Shown here piece by piece: positions 5,150 to 56,890 of a DNA stretch of 64,000 nucleotides. The DNA is taken from the IMG/VR virus record IMGVR_UViG_3300032242_002041, positions 124,001-188,000 of that record; one strand, given 5' to 3'. Position numbers and translations under genes: made by a program. The notes beneath the pieces are model-generated. The model made no database searches, was not told where the DNA came from, and saw only the letters and a list, made by a program, of their open reading frames with translations. The stretch's first letter is position 1, and every line of letters begins with the position of its first letter.

Positions 5150-5379
5150 AAGAATCTTAACCTAAACATTAAGGCATCACGGTCATTGTTAAACCAATAA
5201 CAATCCTCGTGCGGCCCTTGAGTAATTACTGCGGCCGCAACATCTGGAAAATCTTTCCACCAAGCTATATTCCATTCACCTATGTTGGCCAAACACCAAG
5301 GCTCACACTCACTATAGTGAGTATAAGTCTTTACAGGAATGGTCAAGTGTGGGTTACGATCTATGGCCATTATGCCCAC
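5146..5379 (-). CDS. Small paralog-family protein
   Basis: Ends YWFNNDRDALMFRLRFL. Confidence 0.75.
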   Translation of the reverse strand: MGIMAIDRNPHLTIPVKTYTHYSECEPWCLANIGEWNIAWWKDFPDVAAAVITQGPHEDCYWFNNDRDALMFRLRFL

Positions 5380-5591
5380 CTTAACAGGAATGATACATAA
5401 TCTTGATTGTCATAAAATACAAACTTTGCTCTATTGTTATACACTTCATATCGCATACAAGTTGCATAGTCTATGAACTCTCGTCGACACCATGCTAAAA
5501 TTTCATCTAAGTCAAGAAACTCCAATGGAATATCGTGTTCCCATTTACCTGATGGGTAATTGCTGTTCCAATGACCAGGCTTTAAACTCAT
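5370..5591 (-). CDS. Small paralog-family protein
   Basis: Ends FVFYDNQDYVSFLLRWA. Confidence 0.75.
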   Translation of the reverse strand: MSLKPGHWNSNYPSGKWEHDIPLEFLDLDEILAWCRREFIDYATCMRYEVYNNRAKFVFYDNQDYVSFLLRWA

Positions 5592-5836
5592 TTGAACTTT
5601 AACCTAAACAGTGTAGCATCTGCAGGATCAATAAAGTAGAAAGCCGCGGCTTCATCAAAGAAAACATTAACATCTGAATTTTCGACTAACTCTGACCATA
5701 CTAAACTCAGCTTGTTTTCTCGACAAAATTTCTTCATTGCCCACATACGAAACGCCGGATCGTCAATATAAACCGCATGGCATTGATCTAGTACTGATTC
5801 TGCGGGCCTAGGAAGTTCGTAATTGTTTACATGCAT
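5588..5836 (-). CDS. Small paralog-family protein
   Basis: Ends FYFIDPADATLFRLKFK. Confidence 0.75.
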   Translation of the reverse strand: MHVNNYELPRPAESVLDQCHAVYIDDPAFRMWAMKKFCRENKLSLVWSELVENSDVNVFFDEAAAFYFIDPADATLFRLKFK

Positions 5837-6117
5837 CAGCGACCAAACTTTAATAAAAAGATTGTGTACTTTTTTTCGTCAATGATAGCATAATCAATAT
5901 TGACACCACCTGTGTAGCTGTCTATTGTGAGTTTGATGCCATAGTATTCACGCACATAATCGTCAAAGGTAAGGAATCCTTGGCCAACAGGTACTGCCTC
6001 CGCCAGCAGATCCCATTCCTGTTTAGCTTCGTGTAAACGGGCAAAATTACGAGTATCACCACCAATAATAGTATCCAAGCGGGCCGCTGTATTGGCGTAA
6101 TATTCGTCCTTACTCAC
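5836..6117 (-). CDS. Small paralog-family protein
   Basis: Ends YAIIDEKKYTIFLLKFGR. Confidence 0.75.
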   Translation of the reverse strand: MSKDEYYANTAARLDTIIGGDTRNFARLHEAKQEWDLLAEAVPVGQGFLTFDDYVREYYGIKLTIDSYTGGVNIDYAIIDEKKYTIFLLKFGR

Positions 6118-11898: not shown

Positions 11899-11991
11899 TG
11901 GAGGAGGGCTAGGGATTCGAACCCTAGATGGACTGTTAAGGCCCATGTCCGCTTAGTAGGCGGATGCCTTCGACCGCTCGGCCAGCCCTCC
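11899..11991 (-). tRNA. tRNA-Ser(ACT), long variable arm
   Basis: Stem TCCGC/GCGGA with loop CT-ACT-AA; long variable arm; encoded CCA; U73. Confidence 0.85.
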
Positions 11992-23090: not shown

Positions 23091-23167
23091 TGGTGCCCCT
23101 GGTAGGATTCGGACCTACAGATCCCGCCCTCTTAAAGCGGTGACTTTACCAGTTTGTCTACAGGGGT
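23091..23167 (-). tRNA. tRNA-Leu(AAG)-like, atypical (short variable loop, A1:C72 mismatch, TCCGAAT T-loop)
   Basis: Stem CCGCT/GGCGG with loop TT-AAG-AG; encoded CCA. Confidence 0.6.
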
Positions 23168-27738: not shown

Positions 27739-28671
27739 TTACCGAGTTTCTGATATTTGTTTTTCGTAACGATGTACCAAGGCTTTTATTTGCAGTACAC
27801 GCAAATTAAAAAATTCTTCGGTTGACATTTTTGGTTTCCTAAACATAGGAGGACTCATATCCGATGAACTGCTTATGTAATCTGCTCCAAGTTTTTCTTG
27901 TGCTTGATCTAAGATGCGGGCAATTTCCTGTCGCTTGGCCACAGGCATTTTAACATTTGCTACAGTGCTCATAAAAATTGTTGGAGTATTAAATCCTTGC
28001 TCGGATAACGTTTTAATTTCGGGAACTAACGGATTTCTAGTAGGGCAACTGATTCCTAATATTTTTAAGTTGGGATTTTTTGATTTGAAGATTTGATAAT
28101 TTGATACTCGCTCAATTACAAAGTTAATAGGCTCTCCAGCAGCCATTTGAGTCAACGCATCATAGTTGGCTTTATAAACAATATACCTAACTTTAAATCC
28201 TAACTTTTCGCCAATAATAAGTGCAGTTAAATGTGTGGCATTTCCGTAGCCGGTTCCGCCAACAGTAATTTCTTTTTGACCTTTTAGGCTAGCGATTCCT
28301 TGTTGAGTATTACCGATGTTAGTGATTACCGCCCAACAAGCATCACCTTGGGTAGCAACAGGAACATAATCGGATTCATTAATTAACCCCTGTCTTGCAT
28401 TTTCAACAAACGACGGCGCTACTGTGGCCAACCGTGTTTGTGGATTTTGATCCATGGTTTTCAATGCAATGACACCTTGTGCCCCTGGTTTAAATTCTAA
28501 TATAAATTCATATTTATTTTGGCTTCGATTGGCTATGTCCAGCATTTTAATATATGGTGTTGCATTTGGTTGATTGGCGGCAGCTCCAAATTCAATAACA
28601 ATTGTTTCTTGCGCCAACACAGATTGAAATGCTGTTATACAAGCTAATAGACTCAATATTTTTTTAATCAT
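27739..28671 (-). CDS. Bug/TctC-like substrate-binding protein
   Basis: Signal peptide MIKKILSLLACITAFQSVLA; EFKPGAQG, GGTGYGNATHL, IKTLSEQG. Confidence 0.75.
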   Translation of the reverse strand: MIKKILSLLACITAFQSVLAQETIVIEFGAAANQPNATPYIKMLDIANRSQNKYEFILEFKPGAQGVIALKTMDQNPQTRLATVAPSFVENARQGLINESDYVPVATQGDACWAVITNIGNTQQGIASLKGQKEITVGGTGYGNATHLTALIIGEKLGFKVRYIVYKANYDALTQMAAGEPINFVIERVSNYQIFKSKNPNLKILGISCPTRNPLVPEIKTLSEQGFNTPTIFMSTVANVKMPVAKRQEIARILDQAQEKLGADYISSSSDMSPPMFRKPKMSTEEFFNLRVLQIKALVHRYEKQISETR

Positions 28672-28715
28672 AACATTAATAGTTAGTCGACCTTTGCACA
28701 AGCTATAAATATTCC

Positions 28716-29762
28716 ATGCTTAATATACAAGACATTCGTCAAGTACAGATAGAACTCACCACTCGGTGCAATGCTCGTTGCCCGATGTGCATGAGAAATT
28801 ATCGCGGCCTGGATTTCAATTCTGGATATCCTGAAACAGAACTTACTTTAGATAACATAAAACAAATTTTGCAACCAGAATTTTTAAAGCAATTAACTAA
28901 AGGAATAAGCTTCAACGGCAATTTAGGCGATTTTGGGCTAGCCCGAGATGCACAAGAAATAGTACAATGGTTAACAGATCAAGGTGTTCCAGTATACATC
29001 AATTCTAACGCTAGTATGCGTACACCAGACTGGTGGGCCCGACTGGCCCGTCCTGGAGTCAGAATTGGATTTGCCATTGATGGATTAGCGGATACGCACA
29101 GTTTGTACAGACAAGATACCGATTGGCACCGAGTAATAGCCAATGCAACTGCATTTATTCAAGCAGGCGGGCATGCTATTTGGCGCTTTATTCCTTTTGA
29201 TCATAACCAACATCAAGAACAAGCCTGTAAAGATTTAGCTAAAGAACTAGGTTTTTTTCAATTTGAAAATATTAACGAAGGCCGCAACCGCGGGCCTGTA
29301 TATTCTAGACTAGGAGAGTTCAGTCATTGGCTTGGCGAACCTTTTACCGATCAAGAAAAACTAAACCCACCTGATATAAAATCAATGTTAGAAAGTCATG
29401 TTACTTGGTTTGACTATCGTACGGTTAAATCTAACAAAGACACCCAGCCATTAAATTTAATCTGTAATCATAAGCGTATTAAAGAAATTTATATTGCAGC
29501 AGACGGAACTGTTTACCCATGTTGCTTTTTGGGCTTTTATCCCACAACAATGAATCATCCTGGTAATAAAGAATTAAAACCAATGATTAAAAATAACAAC
29601 GCCCTAGAATATCCATTGGAAGAATGCATTAATTGGTTTAACGAAGTTGAAAAATCTTGGGATCGTTCCAGTATTGCCGACGGTAGATTATACACTTGTG
29701 TTAATACTTGTGGGCAACATGACACTCCTATTTTTGCAAAACACAAACAAGAGATAATATGA
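28716..29762 (+). CDS. Radical SAM protein with C-terminal SPASM/Twitch-like domain
   Basis: CNARCPMC; YIAADGTVYPCC; CVNTC; TATAAATA 4 nt upstream. Confidence 0.85.
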   Translation: MLNIQDIRQVQIELTTRCNARCPMCMRNYRGLDFNSGYPETELTLDNIKQILQPEFLKQLTKGISFNGNLGDFGLARDAQEIVQWLTDQGVPVYINSNASMRTPDWWARLARPGVRIGFAIDGLADTHSLYRQDTDWHRVIANATAFIQAGGHAIWRFIPFDHNQHQEQACKDLAKELGFFQFENINEGRNRGPVYSRLGEFSHWLGEPFTDQEKLNPPDIKSMLESHVTWFDYRTVKSNKDTQPLNLICNHKRIKEIYIAADGTVYPCCFLGFYPTTMNHPGNKELKPMIKNNNALEYPLEECINWFNEVEKSWDRSSIADGRLYTCVNTCGQHDTPIFAKHKQEII

Positions 29763-30637
29763 CCAATAGAATAGTAATAGATAAATTAGAATTTTACATC
29801 ACTAACGTATGTAATCTGACTTGTAGTGGATGTAATAGATATAATAATTATAAGTTTGCTGGCTGGGAAAATTGGAATGATTATGAAAAGATTTTTGAAC
29901 AATGGGCAGAAAAAATTGACATTATTAAACCGGTAATATTAGGTGGAGAACCTTTGCTTAATCCCACTATCAACGAGTGGATCAACGGAATTCAGCGAAT
30001 ATGGCCCGCCCACTACTCGCCACAAATTCAAAGCAATGGAACACGTATAGATTTGGTTGACGGGTTATACAACGCATGTCGTAAATCGGGTACATGGATT
30101 GGCATTAGCCTTCATGTGCAAGACGATAGAGATGCTATTTTTAATCGTATTAGAAATTTTTTAGTGCATCCAATTAACGAAACAACTGACAGTAGCTCAC
30201 AACACGGATCAAATTGTCAATTTGTTGATGCAAATAACGTACAAGTGCATGTATGGTTATCTGATCATTTTACACAAAACAATATTATAGAAGGCCCTAT
30301 GGGAGAATTTAAACTATACAATAGTGATCCTATTCTGGCACACAATAACTGTGCATTTGTTAAATTTAAAAATTATCATTTTATCAATGGAAAAATTCAC
30401 AAGTGTGGACCAGCTCCCCTAATGCAACAATTTGATCAGCAGTATCCTTTTAGTATATCAGATGAGGATCGTGCGCTTATACACAGTTATCGAGGGTTAT
30501 CGGTAGATGAATTTGACGAGCGTGGTGAAGAATTTTTCCGTACCATAGATGATCCTATACCACAGTGTAAATTTTGTCCTGAATCATATGAGTATAAAAA
30601 AATACAATTTTCAAATCTAAAGCCTAACAAAATTTAA
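29759..30637 (+). CDS. Radical SAM protein
   Basis: CNLTCSGC; LGGEPLL; C-terminal CKFC. Confidence 0.85.
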   Translation: MTNRIVIDKLEFYITNVCNLTCSGCNRYNNYKFAGWENWNDYEKIFEQWAEKIDIIKPVILGGEPLLNPTINEWINGIQRIWPAHYSPQIQSNGTRIDLVDGLYNACRKSGTWIGISLHVQDDRDAIFNRIRNFLVHPINETTDSSSQHGSNCQFVDANNVQVHVWLSDHFTQNNIIEGPMGEFKLYNSDPILAHNNCAFVKFKNYHFINGKIHKCGPAPLMQQFDQQYPFSISDEDRALIHSYRGLSVDEFDERGEEFFRTIDDPIPQCKFCPESYEYKKIQFSNLKPNKI

Positions 30638-30687: not shown

Positions 30688-31140
30688 TTAGAATGAGTAC
30701 TTAACACCGGCTGTTACAATGTTACCATTGTAGGCTTTGGTAATGTTGTTGCCCTTTTGGTAAGCATAGTCTGCAACCAAATTGATTTTAGAAGTAACTG
30801 GATACGCAACACCAGCACCAGCGAACCCAGCGCCGCCATTGGAAGTCTTTGGACTTTGTGGATCAATATAAGCAACACCAGCACGAACATTGGTTTGTAC
30901 AGGACCTAGTTTAATTACATCGTAGCTGACACTTGCTGTGTAACGATTAACGTCAACACGTTGAGTTGTGCTACGATCTGCAGTAGCTTGAATACCAACT
31001 TTGCCAAAAGATTGACCTGCAGAGATACCAACCAAGTTACTGTCGGAACCCATGTTGCGTCCGCCATATACACCAACATCGGCGGCACTGACCAGCCCAG
31101 CGGATACAGTTAATGCTACTGCTAAAAATAGTTGTTTCAT
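30688..31140 (-). CDS. Small outer-membrane beta-barrel protein (OmpA/Ail/Lom-like)
   Basis: Signal peptide; alternating beta-strands; C-terminal GVKYSF. Confidence 0.8.
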   Translation of the reverse strand: MKQLFLAVALTVSAGLVSAADVGVYGGRNMGSDSNLVGISAGQSFGKVGIQATADRSTTQRVDVNRYTASVSYDVIKLGPVQTNVRAGVAYIDPQSPKTSNGGAGFAGAGVAYPVTSKINLVADYAYQKGNNITKAYNGNIVTAGVKYSF

Positions 31141-31261
31141 TTGATTTATTTCCTTTTAAGAATGGGCACAGATTTATGTCCCGTGAATAATATTTAGTGG
31201 GTTTTACTGATGGACAGCAAAAATGCCAACTTTTTGTTAGTTTTTGGAGTTAACGGCGTAT

Positions 31262-31288
31262 AAAAAGAAACCCGCCGAAGCGGGTTCT
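31262..31288 (-). terminator. Intrinsic terminator downstream of tmRNA
   Basis: AACCCGC-TTCG-GCGGGTT followed by TCTTTTT. Confidence 0.85.
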
Positions 31289-31289
31289 A

Positions 31290-31645
31290 CTATTTTCTGT
31301 TACGAGGTATAATTACCCTAAGCAGTGATTAAACTGCTAAAGATTGACGTTGTGCTGTACGAGCAGAGAACTTAACGTTCTTACCTGAAACAGTTACTTC
31401 GCCTGTATTTGCGTTTGCATTTACGAGATTTGCTTCTTCGACCGAGCTTCCCCAGTCCTAACGGCTTTAGCTTTGCCGATTCTCCAATAGCCCTTGTGTG
31501 CCAATCGATACCAAATTCATCCCCACCGAAGCATACTGTTTTCACCCTCCGAACTTCACGCTGGGTAACGCATCACAATACACTTCGGTGGAGATGTCGG
31601 GGCTTGAACCCGAGTCTTGCTCACCCTACTTCTATCTTCAACGAA
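31290..31645 (-). ncRNA. ssrA: Circularly permuted (two-piece) tmRNA
   Basis: Acceptor piece GACTCGGGTTCAAGCCCCGACATCTCCA (to 31589) precedes 5' piece GGGGATG (31524); intervening self-complementary stem; tag ORF 31418-31329 ANANTGEVTVSGKNVKFSARTAQRQSLAV; outer ends approximate. Confidence 0.85.
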
Positions 31646-31777
31646 TTTTATTTTGTGGCATACTTTTTTAAGTCGACCACTACTAAACCCTTTATGTTGG
31701 ACAAGAGTTCGACCAACTTTTACTCTAAGACACAGTTTGCCTTCACTACGAAGGAATTACAACAATTCTTTTAAAAC

Positions 31778-32020
31778 TTAAATAATCTGGACCAGAGCTT
31801 GAGCTGGCGGCGGTGTAAAAGTGTTTAACAAGGCAATCCACTCGTCGGCTGCTGCTTCTGTAGTCCAAATTCTAACACCGGCTGAGTGATCTATATTGCG
31901 AGCACCGGTACCATTTGTTGTTCCAGCACTAACGCATTCGTCTAGTTTTTGAGACATAGTGTCAGTTTCTGCGGGAGTAGCGTCGCGACCAAACGATACT
32001 ACTGTAATAATTGTAGACAT
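31778..32020 (-). CDS. Hypothetical protein, tandem duplicate 1
   Basis: Shares RIWTTEAAADEW...PPPAQA with 32040..32297. Confidence 0.75.
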   Translation of the reverse strand: MSTIITVVSFGRDATPAETDTMSQKLDECVSAGTTNGTGARNIDHSAGVRIWTTEAAADEWIALLNTFTPPPAQALVQII

Positions 32021-32039
32021 ATAAATTCCTTTTTAATTT

Positions 32040-32297
32040 TTAAGAACCAACCGTAATCACCATTGCTTGTGCAGGTGGCGGAACGATTGCATTAACCGAT
32101 GTTAGCCACTCGTCGGCTGCTGCTTCTGTAGTCCAAATTCTAATCGTTGGACCAGTTAAAGGCGTAGTACTAGCAGTAGCCCTAGAGCCATTGGTAGTAC
32201 CGGCAGCTATGCAATTGGCCAGTTCATTTTCAATTGCAGTACTTTCTGCTGCAGTCAACACTCGTCCTAAGATGACATAAGTTGTAATTATAGACAT
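32040..32297 (-). CDS. Hypothetical protein, tandem duplicate 2
   Basis: As above; identical upstream SD region. Confidence 0.75.
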   Translation of the reverse strand: MSIITTYVILGRVLTAAESTAIENELANCIAAGTTNGSRATASTTPLTGPTIRIWTTEAAADEWLTSVNAIVPPPAQAMVITVGS

Positions 32298-32625: not shown

Positions 32626-33564
32626 TTAACTACGTTTGATTTGATCAACTAATCCAGGAGTGAAATAGTCTTGATACTTGTCATATACCACCTGTGTTGC
32701 CTGAGCAAAACGAGCTTGCTCTTGGGTTGACATTTTAACAACTTCAATGCCATCCGCTATGCAACGGTCTTGCACCAATTTGATATCAGCAACACTTAAA
32801 TCACGCTCGTGACTGGCAGCAACTCGAGCAGCATCGGCTACAACTGTTTGCAATTCTGGGCTTAATGTATTCCAAAAATCTGTGCCAACCAAAATACTAG
32901 TTAAAAACAAACTGTGCTCTGTGTGGTTTACAACCTTGGATACTCGATCTTGACCTAGGGCATAAACACGTGGGTAGGTACTTTCACCAACAGTAACATC
33001 GGCTTGTTCTAAACCTGTGGCTAACTCTTCTAACTCCATTGGCACTACATCGGCGCCAACTGCTTTAAATGTGTCAATAGCAACAGGGCTATGACTTGTG
33101 CGAATTTTCAAACCGCGCAGATCTTCAATCTTGGCAACTGTTTCGTTTCCTGGAATAATGCGGAAGCCGCCTGAGTATGTAAATGCCAGACCTTTAACCT
33201 TCTTGGACTCTTGAAGACTGTCCAATAACTGTTGGCCCACTGCTCCTTCAAATACACGACTAGCATGATCGTGATCAGTGAACAAGAATGGTAAGTCTAA
33301 TGCAAAAAAGTCTTTGTTTACTTTGCCCAGGGTAATGGTGTAGGTTTGACTCATTTCAATTTTACCAGCATCCAATAAATCTAACAATTCGTGTTTGGTC
33401 ACTACGACATTGTTGTTATATTTTTTTGAGTATTCGCCCATGGTCATAACTTCGATATCTAATTGGCCTGGCGCACGAGCATTTACTTCTGCGGCAAATA
33501 CCTTAGCTGCGCGAATGAATAGTTCAATTGGTTCGTGGGCCAATACCCATTTAATATGTTTCAT
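32626..33564 (-). CDS. TRAP transporter substrate-binding protein (DctP-like), no signal peptide
   Basis: ALDLPFLF, GFR, DLRGLKIR, VVPM, TEHS. Confidence 0.85.
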   Translation of the reverse strand: MKHIKWVLAHEPIELFIRAAKVFAAEVNARAPGQLDIEVMTMGEYSKKYNNNVVVTKHELLDLLDAGKIEMSQTYTITLGKVNKDFFALDLPFLFTDHDHASRVFEGAVGQQLLDSLQESKKVKGLAFTYSGGFRIIPGNETVAKIEDLRGLKIRTSHSPVAIDTFKAVGADVVPMELEELATGLEQADVTVGESTYPRVYALGQDRVSKVVNHTEHSLFLTSILVGTDFWNTLSPELQTVVADAARVAASHERDLSVADIKLVQDRCIADGIEVVKMSTQEQARFAQATQVVYDKYQDYFTPGLVDQIKRS

Positions 33565-55256: not shown

Positions 55257-55718
55257 TTAAATTACAGTTGATTGTGTTGGACGAGTAAGATTATAACTAA
55301 TGGAGCATCCGTTCTCGCCGTCTTCGGATACTTCAATTACTACAGCACGACCGGGATAGCGTTCGGCTATCTTTAAATATAAATCATCGGCAATCATTTC
55401 ACATGATTTCCAGTCTAGTTCTAAAACGGGATTCGAAACAATTCCGTTATTGGAATAGAGATTTTCAAGCCACCGTTTGAATTGGATGAATTCGATATCT
55501 CTGTCGTTATGGAAGACATCGATTGACACCCGGAAATGAAAGATATGGCGATGAGGACTGGCCAAAAACGATACATCATATTCTCCTGCTGTGCATAATG
55601 CTGGGTCTGTTGCAGCCGCTGGATAGCGATGAATGCCTTCCTTACGGAATGTAACCCAAATTTGTCTCTGGGCTGCCGCTTTAATGCGTTCAATAGTTTC
55701 GCGTTCTTGTTGTATCAT
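55257..55718 (-). CDS. T-fold QueD paralog, DpdL-like (candidate CDG decarboxylase)
   Basis: LASPHRHIF fits the LxxxHRHxF signature recalled for DpdL; SCEMIA, SEDGENG. Confidence 0.6.
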   Translation of the reverse strand: MIQQERETIERIKAAAQRQIWVTFRKEGIHRYPAAATDPALCTAGEYDVSFLASPHRHIFHFRVSIDVFHNDRDIEFIQFKRWLENLYSNNGIVSNPVLELDWKSCEMIADDLYLKIAERYPGRAVVIEVSEDGENGCSISYNLTRPTQSTVI

Positions 55719-56890
55719 TTCTGGTGGCTTTCTATATTAGTATTATTAAACGAGTCAATGGCATCATACATATCTGGAAAAATTGCACGACTATTTAATT
55801 TTCTATCTTGGTCTAATTTGTTAAATTCTTCTACTGTATATTCAAGTCCGTCCCAATTGGATTTATAGGGAGTTCGATCGTCGTTTAACGAGGCAATTAC
55901 GTTGTCAATGCCAAGAATATTTGAATAATCATTTTTAGAAATTCGCTGTCTAACCAACTCTCTCTGGTGATCAGTTAGTCGTTGAATTGCCCACGGACCA
56001 CCATTATCTCTCAGATTGTAGATATTAATAGTTATTGCTCGATGAGATATATTCAAAGTTTGATGCACCAAATCAATAAAATCCCAAATTGACAACGAGT
56101 TAATATTCATAAACACCATGTTAAAACTAAGGTGATGCTTTGCAATCAAGTTAATTGTGTGTAAATTTTCTAAGAAAACATTCCATTTTCCGGGCCAACG
56201 AATATATTCATATTGTTCTGCAATTGATTCTCCGCTAACTAACCATTGTACATTACTAAACTGTTTCAACAATTCAAAAATTTTATTTTCGTGTATTAGG
56301 CTAAGATTAGTATTAACACAAATACGACAAGATTTATTAACTTCTAATAATTTTCTTAAGACTATTTCGTTTTCTTTTATCATCAACGGCTCGCCACCAG
56401 CAAGATATATTTCTTTAAGGTCGGCAGCAGATTCTAAAACATAATCTAACAAATCTCCTTTGGCTTCTTTCATCTTAACTACTTGATATTTCTGTTCGGC
56501 CCATAGTGAGCTGAGCTCAGGGTCACAATATATGCAGGCAAAATTGCAGGTATTGTTCCAACGCAAATCAAGATATTTTAAATTAAAGTTATCAATATTG
56601 TTGTAAAACTCATCACCAAGATGGTTATATTTCTTTTTAAAATGATGTTGTAAAGTATGAGTACCAATCTGAGAGTGGCAATTTTTACACCCTTCAACCG
56701 GAATATCATTTAACATCATTGTTTTGATATCGAGATTATTAGAGCCGCTTATTGTGTCTTTGATTGCAGGAGTTTTATTAATATTACCTAATTTATTTTT
56801 ACTCACACAACAATTTTCTATATTGCCTTGGGGGTCAATATACAGTGAAACCCACGGCGCTGGACAGAAATGTTTATTATCTATGGTCAT
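55715..56890 (-). CDS. Twitch-domain radical SAM protein
   Basis: N-terminal CPAPW...CC; CNFACIYC; AGGEPL. Confidence 0.85.
   Translation of the reverse strand: MTIDNKHFCPAPWVSLYIDPQGNIENCCVSKNKLGNINKTPAIKDTISGSNNLDIKTMMLNDIPVEGCKNCHSQIGTHTLQHHFKKKYNHLGDEFYNNIDNFNLKYLDLRWNNTCNFACIYCDPELSSLWAEQKYQVVKMKEAKGDLLDYVLESAADLKEIYLAGGEPLMIKENEIVLRKLLEVNKSCRICVNTNLSLIHENKIFELLKQFSNVQWLVSGESIAEQYEYIRWPGKWNVFLENLHTINLIAKHHLSFNMVFMNINSLSIWDFIDLVHQTLNISHRAITINIYNLRDNGGPWAIQRLTDHQRELVRQRISKNDYSNILGIDNVIASLNDDRTPYKSNWDGLEYTVEEFNKLDQDRKLNSRAIFPDMYDAIDSFNNTNIESHQK

What the first reader, a model, noticed from the sequence alone, without database searches (positions are those of the whole stretch)
31290..31645. 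Phage-borne circularly permuted tmRNA with a long, non-canonical tag ending LAV
Seen: acceptor piece before coding piece; CCA not encoded (CCG); intervening segment closed by CCACCGAAG/CTTCGGTGG; 29-codon tag ANANTGEVTVSGKNVKFSARTAQRQSLAV. Known: permuted tmRNAs occur in alphaproteobacteria, some cyanobacteria and some betaproteobacteria, and ClpXP reads C-terminal LAA. Inference: the altered tag may rescue ribosomes while changing the proteolytic fate of tagged proteins. The permutation may also hint at host lineage.
Basis: partly seen in the sequence, partly recalled or inferred. Interest (0 to 1): 0.6.

Follow-up and report, generated by a model that had tools for sequence, protein, structure and literature searches.

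The report
Phage two-piece tmRNA, lengthened tag
A giant freshwater phage carries its own split ribosome-rescue RNA (two-piece tmRNA) of the betaproteobacterial type; such RNAs are already known in phages, but here the tag it adds to unfinished proteins has grown from 13 to 29 residues, ends in Val instead of Ala, and is conserved in dozens of related phages.

Summary
CCA is not encoded, and a long helix closes the intervening segment.

The window lies in a 228-kb IMG/VR contig of a roughly 340-kb jumbo phage related to Sinorhizobium phage Phosso and Agrobacterium phage Atu_ph07.

The gene is conserved in the clade: 9 of 12 related records have it, and tag patterns found about 67 more contigs. 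It occurs as two alleles:
- a canonical 13-residue tag ending in LAA
- a 29-residue tag, always ending in [L/F]AV, that differs by a net 16 in-frame codons

Synonymous changes, a fixed frame and compensatory changes in every helix argue that the long tag is translated and the RNA works. G3·U70 and A73 never vary.

Sister genes are full-length beta-type (Rhodocyclaceae-like) tmRNAs, not alpha-type.

No SmpB or CCA-adding enzyme was found, so host factors are needed. The clade does encode its own ClpX, two ClpP-like subunits, a ClpA-like unfoldase and DnaJ.

Two-piece processing and the fate of tagged proteins remain untested.

Verdict: a new variant of a known kind, of moderate interest.

The parts
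31731..31770 (-). 40-nt fragment matching the 5' end of the acceptor piece of 'type-B' sister genes. It is a scar of cassette replacement and probably not part of the working RNA.
   Evidence: It aligns with the start of sister genes L094, L095 and L098. Relatives in lake RNA runs join 31739 directly to 31618. It is absent upstream of the other type-A copies examined.
31651..31730 (-). Leader shared with type-A sister genes (two hairpins). The promoter was not identified.
   Evidence: The same roughly 80-nt region lies upstream of L103, L105, L106 and L141. No sigma-70-like site was found on the minus strand in 31000-32100, whereas sisters L093, L097 and L101 have a consensus -35/-10 pair.
31587..31650 (-). 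Acceptor piece. It holds the P2 strands (31646-31643, 31636-31632, 31624-31622, 31619-31617), the T arm, the acceptor 3' strand, A73 and C74-C75. The 5' end is not mapped, and the terminal A must be added after transcription.
   Evidence: Rfam alignment. P2 segments show compensatory changes between the window and L101.
31597..31613 (-). T arm (5-bp stem, 7-nt loop).
   Evidence: Rfam alignment. The T stem shows up to 4 pair types per position among 39 distinct copies.
31586..31596 (-). Acceptor 3' strand (31596-31590; U70 at 31592), then discriminator A73, C74, C75 and G76, so CCA is not fully encoded.
   Evidence: Position 76 is A, T, G or C in sister genes, with a compensating leader base in 36 of 39.
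31525..31585 (-). Intervening segment, 61 nt, removed if the RNA matures into two pieces. Its ends extend the acceptor stem into a long helix.
   Evidence: The precursor fold has a 22-bp continuous helix. Leader/trailer pairs covary, with 3-6 pair types at several positions, and my selection did not force this. The length is 23-116 nt in sister genes.
31268..31524 (-). Coding piece, from G1 (the expected RNase P site) to the terminator.
   Evidence: Rfam and ARAGORN; landmarks.
31518..31524 (-). Acceptor 5' strand. G3 (31522) pairs with U70 (31592), the alanine identity pair.
   Evidence: G1-C, G2-C and G3·U are invariant in 39 distinct copies, while pairs 4-7 change on both sides.
31479..31517 (-). 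D-loop-like single strand (31517-31505; the SmpB-contact region in known tmRNAs) and the P2 strands of the coding piece (31504-31502, 31500-31498, 31490-31486, 31482-31479).
   Evidence: Rfam alignment. Compensatory changes between the window and L101.
31440..31478 (-). PK1 region, two hairpins (31478-31462 and 31457-31440) upstream of the resume codon. The pseudoknot pairing itself is not established.
   Evidence: Rfam models the first hairpin. Both hairpins appear in the folds.
31329..31418 (-). Tag reading frame: resume codon GCA at 31418-31416, 29 sense codons to 31332, stop UAA at 31331-31329.
   Evidence: ARAGORN and the Rfam alignment agree on the resume codon. There are 29 distinct nucleotide versions that keep the frame, with synonymous variation.
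31341..31394 (-). Codons 9-26, the stretch that stands in place of two codons of the short allele (net +16 codons, 48 nt).
   Evidence: Alignment of long-tag and short-tag sister genes.
31321..31338 (-). Helix 5: 6-bp stem (31338-31333 with 31326-31321) with the stop codon in its loop.
   Evidence: Compensatory changes across copies; four different pair types at the position formed by the third base of codon 27.
31289..31318 (-). 3' pseudoknot: stem 1 is 31318-31314 with 31309-31305, and the loop 31313-31310 pairs with 31292-31289.
   Evidence: Both stems show compensatory changes among copies. The equivalent element is in the RF01850 alignment of sister L093.
31262..31287 (-). Intrinsic terminator (8-bp G+C-rich stem, then a T run).
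   Evidence: Terminator scan. A terminator hairpin sits at this place in most copies with varied, compensating stems; L104 shows none in the 87 nt listed and three rows are cut short.

Best explanation
This is a working, phage-encoded two-piece tmRNA of the betaproteobacterial (Rhodocyclaceae-like) lineage.

Inferred pathway:
- The gene is transcribed as one precursor. Its acceptor stem continues into a long leader/trailer helix.
- Host RNase P and 3' trimming enzymes remove the 61-nt intervening segment.
- The host CCA-adding enzyme supplies A76.
- Host AlaRS charges the RNA through G3·U70 and A73.
- Host SmpB and EF-Tu deliver it to stalled ribosomes.
- Translation resumes on GCA and appends a 29-residue peptide.

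Shown here: the sequence anatomy; conservation with compensatory changes; coding-type variation in the tag; the lack of SmpB and of a CCA-adding enzyme in the phage genomes searched.

Inferred about the tag: it is still a Clp-type degron, with a hydrophobic-Ala-Val carboxyl end, but with lower affinity for a canonical ClpX. It also lacks the Asn-Asp motif that the short allele shares with bacterial tags and that SspB-type adaptors read. Tagged proteins would then be cleared more slowly, or by other unfoldases, possibly the phage's own ClpX or ClpA-like proteins with ClpP.
For: Identity:
- ARAGORN calls a permuted tmRNA. RF04321 scores 70.5 bits against a cut-off of 47.

Conservation:
- 9 of 12 related phage records have it, including both records that are at least 90% complete.
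- 49 contigs carry the long-tag pattern and 18 the short-tag pattern.

RNA function:
- G1-C72, G2-C71, G3·U70 and A73 are invariant. Acceptor pairs 4-7 and the T stem change on both sides, and the leader/trailer helix covaries.
- P2, helix 5, the 3' pseudoknot and the terminator also show compensatory changes.

Tag translated:
- The length is 29 codons in 47 copies; the variants of 27 and 28 codons stay in frame.
- The end is always [L/F]AV followed by UAA.
- Synonymous variants exist, for example Ser11 as TCA, TCT, TCG or AGT, and Arg20 as CGT or CGC.
- The core motif is also present in the six long-tag genes found by the covariance model alone.

Lineage:
- Sister L093 scores 131.6 bits over all 331 positions of RF01850.
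- Phage genes are about 70% identical to Thauera, Azonexus and Dechloromonas tmRNAs, which share the trailer motif.

Dependence on the host:
- No SmpB was found in this contig or in complete sisters, and no CCA-adding enzyme in this contig.

Clp genes in the clade.

Degron logic:
- Changing the last Ala raises K_M with little effect on V_max (PMC7652416).
- The ...AAV variant is still a ClpXP substrate but is degraded more slowly (PMC9382460).

RNA evidence:
- Lake metatranscriptome contigs of close relatives lie on the gene and not on its flanks.
Against: - No direct evidence of two mature pieces, of charging or of tagging. The RNA runs were available only as contigs of relatives (90-99% alike). 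These run on into unlike sequence, so DNA carry-over or divergence of the flanks could explain the coverage pattern.
- The window's copy is the most divergent one examined: 70.5 bits against 76-124 bits in sisters, and only a partial 33.8-bit match to RF01850.
- It has no recognisable sigma-70 promoter, and a recombination scar lies upstream.
- The central tag motif was part of my search pattern, so its invariance in the pattern-derived set is partly by construction.
- ClpX contact loops do not differ by tag type.
- The statements on degron strength come from E. coli data on other tag variants, not on LAV.
Confidence: 0.6

Rival explanations
1. It is a functional tmRNA, but the long tag is a neutral or equivalent variant. 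Tagged proteins are degraded like those with canonical tags, and the extra 16 codons have no consequence of their own.
For: The carboxyl end stays hydrophobic-Ala-small hydrophobic. Tags ending in Val are still ClpXP substrates (PMC9382460). Both alleles occur among phages whose DNA polymerases are 88-96% identical to the window's. The ClpX loops are the same in both groups.
Against: A neutral insertion should drift in length and sequence. Instead the length is fixed at 29 codons in 47 copies. The GEVTV segment lies outside my search pattern and is nearly invariant. Serine 11 is kept through a switch between TCN and AGT codons. The last residue is Val in every long copy and Ala in every short copy.
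Confidence: 0.22
2. The long tag is an orthogonal handle matched to the phage's own Clp machinery (ClpX, ClpA-like, two ClpP-like subunits). Together they form a self-contained viral rescue-and-degradation module, or one that sequesters tagged proteins.
For: The clade encodes a bona fide ClpX (506 bits against a cut-off of 359), ClpP (316 against 249), a second ClpP-like protein, a ClpA-like protein of 758 aa in this very contig, and DnaJ. The tag lost the Asn-Asp motif and changed its last residue.
Against: Short-tag phages carry the same Clp set. The pore-1 and pore-2 regions are identical, and the RKH-loop equivalent does not track tag type (only five genomes). No adaptor (SspB) was found. 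Nothing links the tag to these proteins beyond co-occurrence, which is also reported for phage G and AP-J-162.
Confidence: 0.12
3. The gene is decaying, or acts mainly as a decoy that blocks host trans-translation, as reported for the reading-frame-less tmRNA-like gene of mycobacteriophage DS6A. The long frame would then be a by-product.
For: The window's copy scores lowest in the family, lacks a recognisable promoter and sits behind a recombination scar. PMC11915505 cites inhibition of the endogenous tmRNA by the DS6A form.
Against: All helices are kept by compensatory changes, G3·U70 is invariant, and the frame, resume codon and stop-in-loop are kept in about 50 copies with synonymous variation. 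A decoy would not need a conserved reading frame.
Confidence: 0.04
4. It is bacterial DNA: a host tmRNA gene, or a fragment picked up at a prophage attachment site and misfiled as viral.
For: tmRNA genes are common integration sites, and fragments occur in prophages (discussed in PMC9004378).
Against: The gene is complete and lies in the middle of a 228-kb contig with a T4-type DNA polymerase and ten tRNA genes. It is at the same place in a 337-kb sister genome with terminal repeats. The best bacterial matches are only about 70% identical.
Confidence: 0.02

Closest known systems
Beta-type two-piece tmRNA of Rhodocyclaceae/Azonexaceae (Thauera, Dechloromonas, Azonexus; Rfam RF01850)
   Same: The gene order is the same. 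The motif of acceptor 3' strand plus trailer is shared, the 3' pseudoknot and terminator are equivalent, and identity is about 70% over 150-200 nt. Sister phage genes match the whole model at 131.6 bits, and their short tags end like the bacterial ANDE-x-FA-x-AA tags.
   Different: The window's copy matches only the tRNA-like core of RF01850 (33.8 bits against a cut-off of 84). The tag has 29 residues rather than 10 and ends in Val. The gene lies in a phage without smpB.
Two-piece tmRNAs of marine phages (OM43 phage Melnitz, pelagimyophages; PMC9004378)
   Same: They are phage-borne and circularly permuted, have no phage smpB reported, and are common in aquatic phages (53 of 133 distinct phage tmRNAs were two-piece).
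   Different: Those are alpha-related and partly linked to a glutamine riboswitch. Here no riboswitch was found even at relaxed thresholds, the type is beta, the setting is freshwater, the phage is a jumbo phage, and the tag is lengthened.
tmRNAs of related jumbo phages: Sinorhizobium phages Phosso and AP-J-162 (PMC11242549)
   Same: They are the closest cultured phage lineage by DNA polymerase (49.6% identity). They also carry a tmRNA and Clp genes; Phosso has an annotated ClpX-type subunit, and AP-J-162 is reported with six Clp ORFs and DnaJ.
   Different: Phosso's gene is alpha-type (RF01849, 108 bits), has a canonical 13-residue tag ending in LAA and an intervening segment of about 370 nt.
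E. coli ssrA tag and its engineered variants (LAA, LVA, AAV, ASV)
   Same: A C-terminal hydrophobic tripeptide with a free carboxylate is read by ClpX. Variants ending in Val are still degraded.
   Different: The natural tag here is almost three times longer, is basic rather than acidic, and its interaction with any protease is untested.

Membership tests
tmRNA (any form) | tRNA-like domain: 7-bp acceptor stem with G3·U70, discriminator A73 and a T arm. | tested here: met
   Positions 31524-31518 pair with 31596-31590, and G3 (31522) pairs with U70 (31592). A73 is at 31589 and the T arm at 31613-31597. These features are invariant or compensated in 39 distinct sister copies.
tmRNA (any form) | 3'-terminal CCA. 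| tested here: inconclusive
   Only CC is encoded (ACCG, 31589-31586). Sister genes have A, T, G or C at position 76. This requires addition after transcription, and no phage CCA-adding enzyme was found.
tmRNA (any form) | Tag reading frame that resumes on an Ala codon after PK1 and ends with a stop codon in helix 5. | tested here: met
   The resume codon GCA is at 31418-31416 and UAA lies in the loop of the 31338-31321 hairpin. The PK1 hairpins are present, but their pseudoknot pairing is not shown.
tmRNA (any form) | Tag ends in a degron of the Ala-Ala type. | tested here: not met
   The end is Leu-Ala-Val. All long-allele copies end in [L/F]AV.
tmRNA (any form) | Alanylation, SmpB binding and trans-translation activity. 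| not testable with these tools
   These need biochemistry or genetics. No smpB was found in this contig or in complete sisters.
Permuted (two-piece) tmRNA, Rfam RF04321 | Acceptor piece encoded upstream of the coding piece, and a score above the gathering threshold. | tested here: met
   70.5 bits against 47, covering model positions 1-213 of 213. ARAGORN flags it as permuted.
Permuted (two-piece) tmRNA, Rfam RF04321 | Mature RNA consists of two base-paired pieces. | not testable with these tools
   Only assembled contigs of RNA runs were available. Some span the intervening segment, and none can show RNA ends.
Beta-type permuted tmRNA, Rfam RF01850 | Full-length match above the gathering score of 84 bits. 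| tested here: not met
   The window's copy gives 33.8 bits for model positions 80-163, plus 12.8 bits for 246-304. The sister gene L093 meets it with 131.6 bits over positions 1-331. The window's copy is therefore a divergent derivative of that lineage, not a model-level member.
Alpha-type permuted tmRNA, Rfam RF01849 | Best-scoring lineage model for the gene. | tested here: not met
   Within the clan the beta model was the one retained for the window and for L093. The alpha model wins only for Phosso.

The most novel reading that the evidence does not exclude
The 29-residue tag is a phage-evolved, orthogonal signal read by the phage's own Clp unfoldases and peptidases rather than by the host's ClpXP-SspB route. 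The virus would then run a private system of ribosome rescue plus protein disposal (or sequestration) during infection. The coexisting 13- and 29-residue alleles would mark an ongoing switch between using the host's system and a viral one.
Probability: 0.12. Interest if true: 0.8.

Novelty: new variant of a known kind. Interest (0 to 1): 0.5.

Why it matters
tmRNA tags are short and, in most bacteria, end in Ala-Ala. What a virus gains by bringing its own tmRNA is an open question.

This clade offers a natural experiment. Closely related giant phages carry either a canonical tag or a conserved tag more than twice as long with a different last residue. Both sit on freely recombining RNA cassettes, and both come together with a complete phage-encoded Clp set.

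Comparing the two alleles with host and phage proteases would directly test whether phages use trans-translation merely to keep ribosomes running or to redirect protein turnover.

The beta-type identity also gives a usable, though not decisive, host clue for an abundant group of uncultured freshwater jumbo phages.

Tried and rejected
- blastn of the gene against 50,697 phage records found no match.
- Host inference from the neighbouring DctP gene failed. The best matches were at most 34% identical in 400 Pseudomonadota genomes, and no taxon names were given.
- The tag and its extra segment have no significant similarity elsewhere in the phage contig, at protein or DNA level.
- I first read the block 31619-31738 as a decayed older acceptor piece. 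I rejected this because type-A sister genes share the same leader.
- No glutamine riboswitch or other Rfam family lies beside the gene, even at E up to 10.
- SspB and Tsp-type (S41) peptidases were not found in five clade genomes.
- ClpX loops against tag type showed no association.
- A hairpin inside the extra segment gave one compensated, one wobble and one broken variant, which is inconclusive.
- On the DNA-polymerase tree the two alleles could not be separated. The tree is unresolved; it needs two changes, but a single origin is not excluded.
- A resemblance of the motif N-[IV]-K-F-S-A-R to cyanobacterial tags is from memory only and was not tested.
As a result, whether the leader motif recurs elsewhere in the genome (a possible phage promoter) was not tested, and part coordinates were read by hand.

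Full report
**What is there.** Rfam's merged model for permuted tmRNAs (RF04321) matches 31646-31386 end to end at 70.5 bits, against a gathering score of 47.

The sequence itself shows the following:
- The acceptor piece comes first. It holds the T arm (31613-31597) and the acceptor 3' strand (31596-31590), followed by A73-C-C-G. The terminal A of CCA is therefore not encoded.
- A 61-nt intervening segment follows (31585-31525).
- The coding piece starts with G1 at 31524.
- G3 (31522) pairs with U70 (31592).
- The reading frame resumes on GCA at 31418 and stops at UAA 31331-31329. The stop lies in the loop of a 6-bp hairpin.
- A pseudoknot and an intrinsic terminator (31287-31268) close the gene.

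**What genome this is.** The window is bases 124001-188000 of a 228,286-bp IMG/VR virus record that CheckV rates 66% complete.
- Its family-B DNA polymerase is closest to Sinorhizobium phage Phosso (49.6% identity) and Agrobacterium phage Atu_ph07 (45.8%). The Rak2/GAP32-like jumbo phages come next.
- IMG/VR holds about 600 contigs with this polymerase. The 80 kept are 85-96% identical, and some reach 317-340 kb.
- One of them (337 kb) has terminal repeats and is rated complete.
- Public runs that hold parts of the gene come almost all from lake or other freshwater samples.

**Conservation and the two alleles.** RF04321 finds a tmRNA in 9 of 12 related records, including both that are at least 90% complete. 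The tags fall into two classes.
- Three records (L093, L096, L097) have 13-residue tags of the form ANA-x-N-x-E-x-FALAA.
- Six records, and the window, have 29-residue tags.
- The long allele equals the short one with 18 codons in place of two, a net gain of 48 nt. The last codon changes from Ala to Val and the stop from UGA to UAA.

Pattern scans of IMG/VR found 49 contigs with the long allele and 18 with the short one.

Among the long-allele copies:
- 47 have 29 codons, four have 27 and one has 28, all in frame.
- All end in [L/F]AV.
- There are 29 distinct nucleotide versions with clear synonymous variation: Ser11 as TCA, TCT, TCG or AGT; Val10 as GTT or GTA; Arg20 and Arg24 as CGT or CGC; Phe27 as TTC or TTT.

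The central motif was part of my search pattern, so its invariance in that set is partly by construction. The same motif is, however, present in the six long-tag genes found by the covariance model alone. The GEVTV stretch lies outside the pattern and is nearly invariant.

**RNA-level selection.** Among 65 copies there are 39 distinct versions of the tRNA-like domain.
- G1-C72, G2-C71 and G3·U70 never vary.
- Acceptor pairs 4-7 and the T stem change on both sides, with 2-4 pair types per position. My extraction required pairing in these two stems, so the number of pair types is the informative measure there.
- The leader/trailer helix beyond the acceptor stem was not forced by my selection, and it covaries strongly: 3-6 pair types at several positions. 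The pair between leader position -4 and nucleotide 76 has four types and is paired in 36 of 39.
- The non-encoded A76 is therefore part of a conserved precursor helix. The same trailer motif is in the consensus of RF01850.

P2 segments, helix 5, both stems of the 3' pseudoknot and the terminator also show compensatory changes. The third base of codon 27 pairs within helix 5, so coding and structural constraints overlap there.

**Lineage.** The short-tag sister L093 matches the betaproteobacterial model RF01850 over all 331 positions at 131.6 bits, against a cut-off of 84.
- I scanned one genome per bacterial species for the acceptor-strand-plus-trailer motif. It returned mostly Thauera, Dechloromonas, Azonexus and other Rhodocyclaceae-type genomes, with tags ANDEQFAIAA, ANDERFAVAA or ANDERFALAA.
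- Phage genes align to these at about 70% identity over 150-200 nt.
- As a calibration, Phosso infects an alphaproteobacterium and carries an alpha-type gene (RF01849, 108 bits).

The window's own copy reaches only 33.8 bits on the core of RF01850. It is a diverged member of this lineage, not a model-level match.

The type therefore points to a Rhodocyclaceae-like betaproteobacterial host. I hold this at roughly even odds only. Phage Melnitz shows that phage and host tmRNA types can disagree (PMC9004378), and the neighbouring host-like genes gave no signal.

**Mosaicism.** At least two sequence types of the tRNA-like domain and P2/PK1 region occur, and each is found with both tag alleles.
- The window has a complete type-A cassette, including its roughly 80-nt leader, which it shares with L103, L105, L106 and L141.
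- This cassette sits directly behind the first 40 nt of a type-B gene (31770-31731). That remnant is missing from the other type-A copies examined.
- Relatives in lake RNA runs join 31739 straight to 31618.
- I read this as a scar of cassette replacement.
- The polymerase tree is too unresolved to say how often the tag allele changed.

**Dependence on the host, and the phage's own Clp set.** SmpB was not found in this contig or in three sisters, two of them at least 93% complete. No CCA-adding enzyme was found in this contig. SspB and S41 peptidases were not found either.

Unexpectedly, the clade encodes its own Clp machinery:
- a bona fide ClpX (400 aa with a zinc finger; 506 bits against a cut-off of 359)
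- a near-canonical ClpP (316 bits against 249) and a second ClpP-like subunit
- a 758-aa ClpA-like double-ring ATPase, with DnaJ beside it. These two lie in this very contig, outside the window.

By synteny, clpX and clpP would lie beyond the end of this incomplete contig. Both tag classes have this set, and the ClpX substrate-contact loops do not track tag type. Clp genes together with a tmRNA have been listed for AP-J-162 and phage G without being linked functionally (PMC11242549, PMC12484599).

**Expression.** The four RNA runs I laid are held only as assembled contigs. Contigs 90-99% alike cover 31262-31646 and 31738-31773 in three of the four runs, and they leave the flanking genes almost bare; only one run gave a trace near 31078-31185. 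One 166-nt contig has a word depth of 151. This fits an abundant stable RNA. It is weak evidence, though, because the contigs come from relatives with different flanks, and contigs cannot show RNA ends. Processing into two pieces is therefore untested.

**What the tag may do.** Structural work shows that ClpX reads the terminal Ala-Ala-carboxylate, and that changing the last Ala raises K_M with little effect on V_max (PMC7652416). The engineered ...AAV variant is still a ClpXP substrate but is degraded more slowly (PMC9382460).

By inference, a tag ending in LAV is a weaker canonical degron rather than a non-degron. The long allele has also lost the Asn-Asp motif kept by the short allele. SspB adaptors read that motif in E. 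coli; this rests on established knowledge and was not tested here. Whether this slows clearance, shifts it to other proteases or to the phage's Clp proteins, or has no effect is open.

**Comparison and novelty.** Phage-borne two-piece tmRNAs are known: 53 of 133 distinct phage tmRNAs were two-piece in a 2021 survey, mostly from aquatic phages (PMC9004378). The curated tmRNA database lists 79 phage sequences (PMC11915505).

As far as the papers I searched show, these points are new:
- a beta-type gene in a widespread group of freshwater jumbo phages
- its conserved 29-residue tag ending in Val, coexisting with a canonical allele in sister phages
- the cassette mosaicism

I rate it a new variant of a known kind, of moderate interest.

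Noticed in passing
L004:1501-2103 (Sinorhizobium phage Phosso, PV764938.1 349596-350198, minus strand): An unannotated alpha-type two-piece tmRNA (RF01849 108 bits, RF04321 113 bits) with a 13-residue tag ending in LAA and an intervening segment of about 370 nt. ARAGORN misses it, and the GenBank record shows a 750-nt gap in annotation there.
   Followed up: yes
G000 contig about 208.4-211.6 kb (L246:2941-5217 and 5294-6085, outside the window); L244 and L247 in sister phage G001: The phage clade encodes its own ClpA-like unfoldase and DnaJ (in this contig). Sister genomes also encode ClpX, ClpP and a second ClpP-like subunit, which together make a full protein-turnover set alongside the tmRNA.
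   Followed up: partly
window 31731-31770 (minus strand): A 40-nt remnant of the start of a different tmRNA cassette type lies directly after the stop of ORF 31778-32020. It is a recombination scar, seen only in this copy among those examined.
   Followed up: yes
window 27739-28701 (-), 30688-31140 (-), 32626-33564 (-): Host-like envelope and periplasmic genes flank the tmRNA in a phage genome: a TctC-like binding protein, an outer-membrane beta-barrel protein and a DctP-type TRAP solute-binding protein (184 bits). All are too divergent to name a donor.
   Followed up: partly
window 28716-30637 (+) and 55715-56890 (-): Three radical-SAM genes, one with a weak, below-cut-off SPASM match. A further radical-SAM/SPASM gene sits next to clpP in sister phage G001 (L244:9591-10898). 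Their function is unknown.
   Followed up: no
window 11899-11991 (-) and 23091-23167 (-): ARAGORN calls tRNA-Ser with anticodon ACT and tRNA-Leu with anticodon AAG. Both have an unusual A at position 34. All ten tRNA genes and the tmRNA are on the minus strand.
   Followed up: no
L093, L097, L101 (sister tmRNA genes) versus window 31650-32100: These sister genes have a consensus -35/-10 promoter pair with 17-nt spacing directly upstream of the acceptor piece. The window's copy has none on that strand, so its transcription start is unknown.
   Followed up: partly
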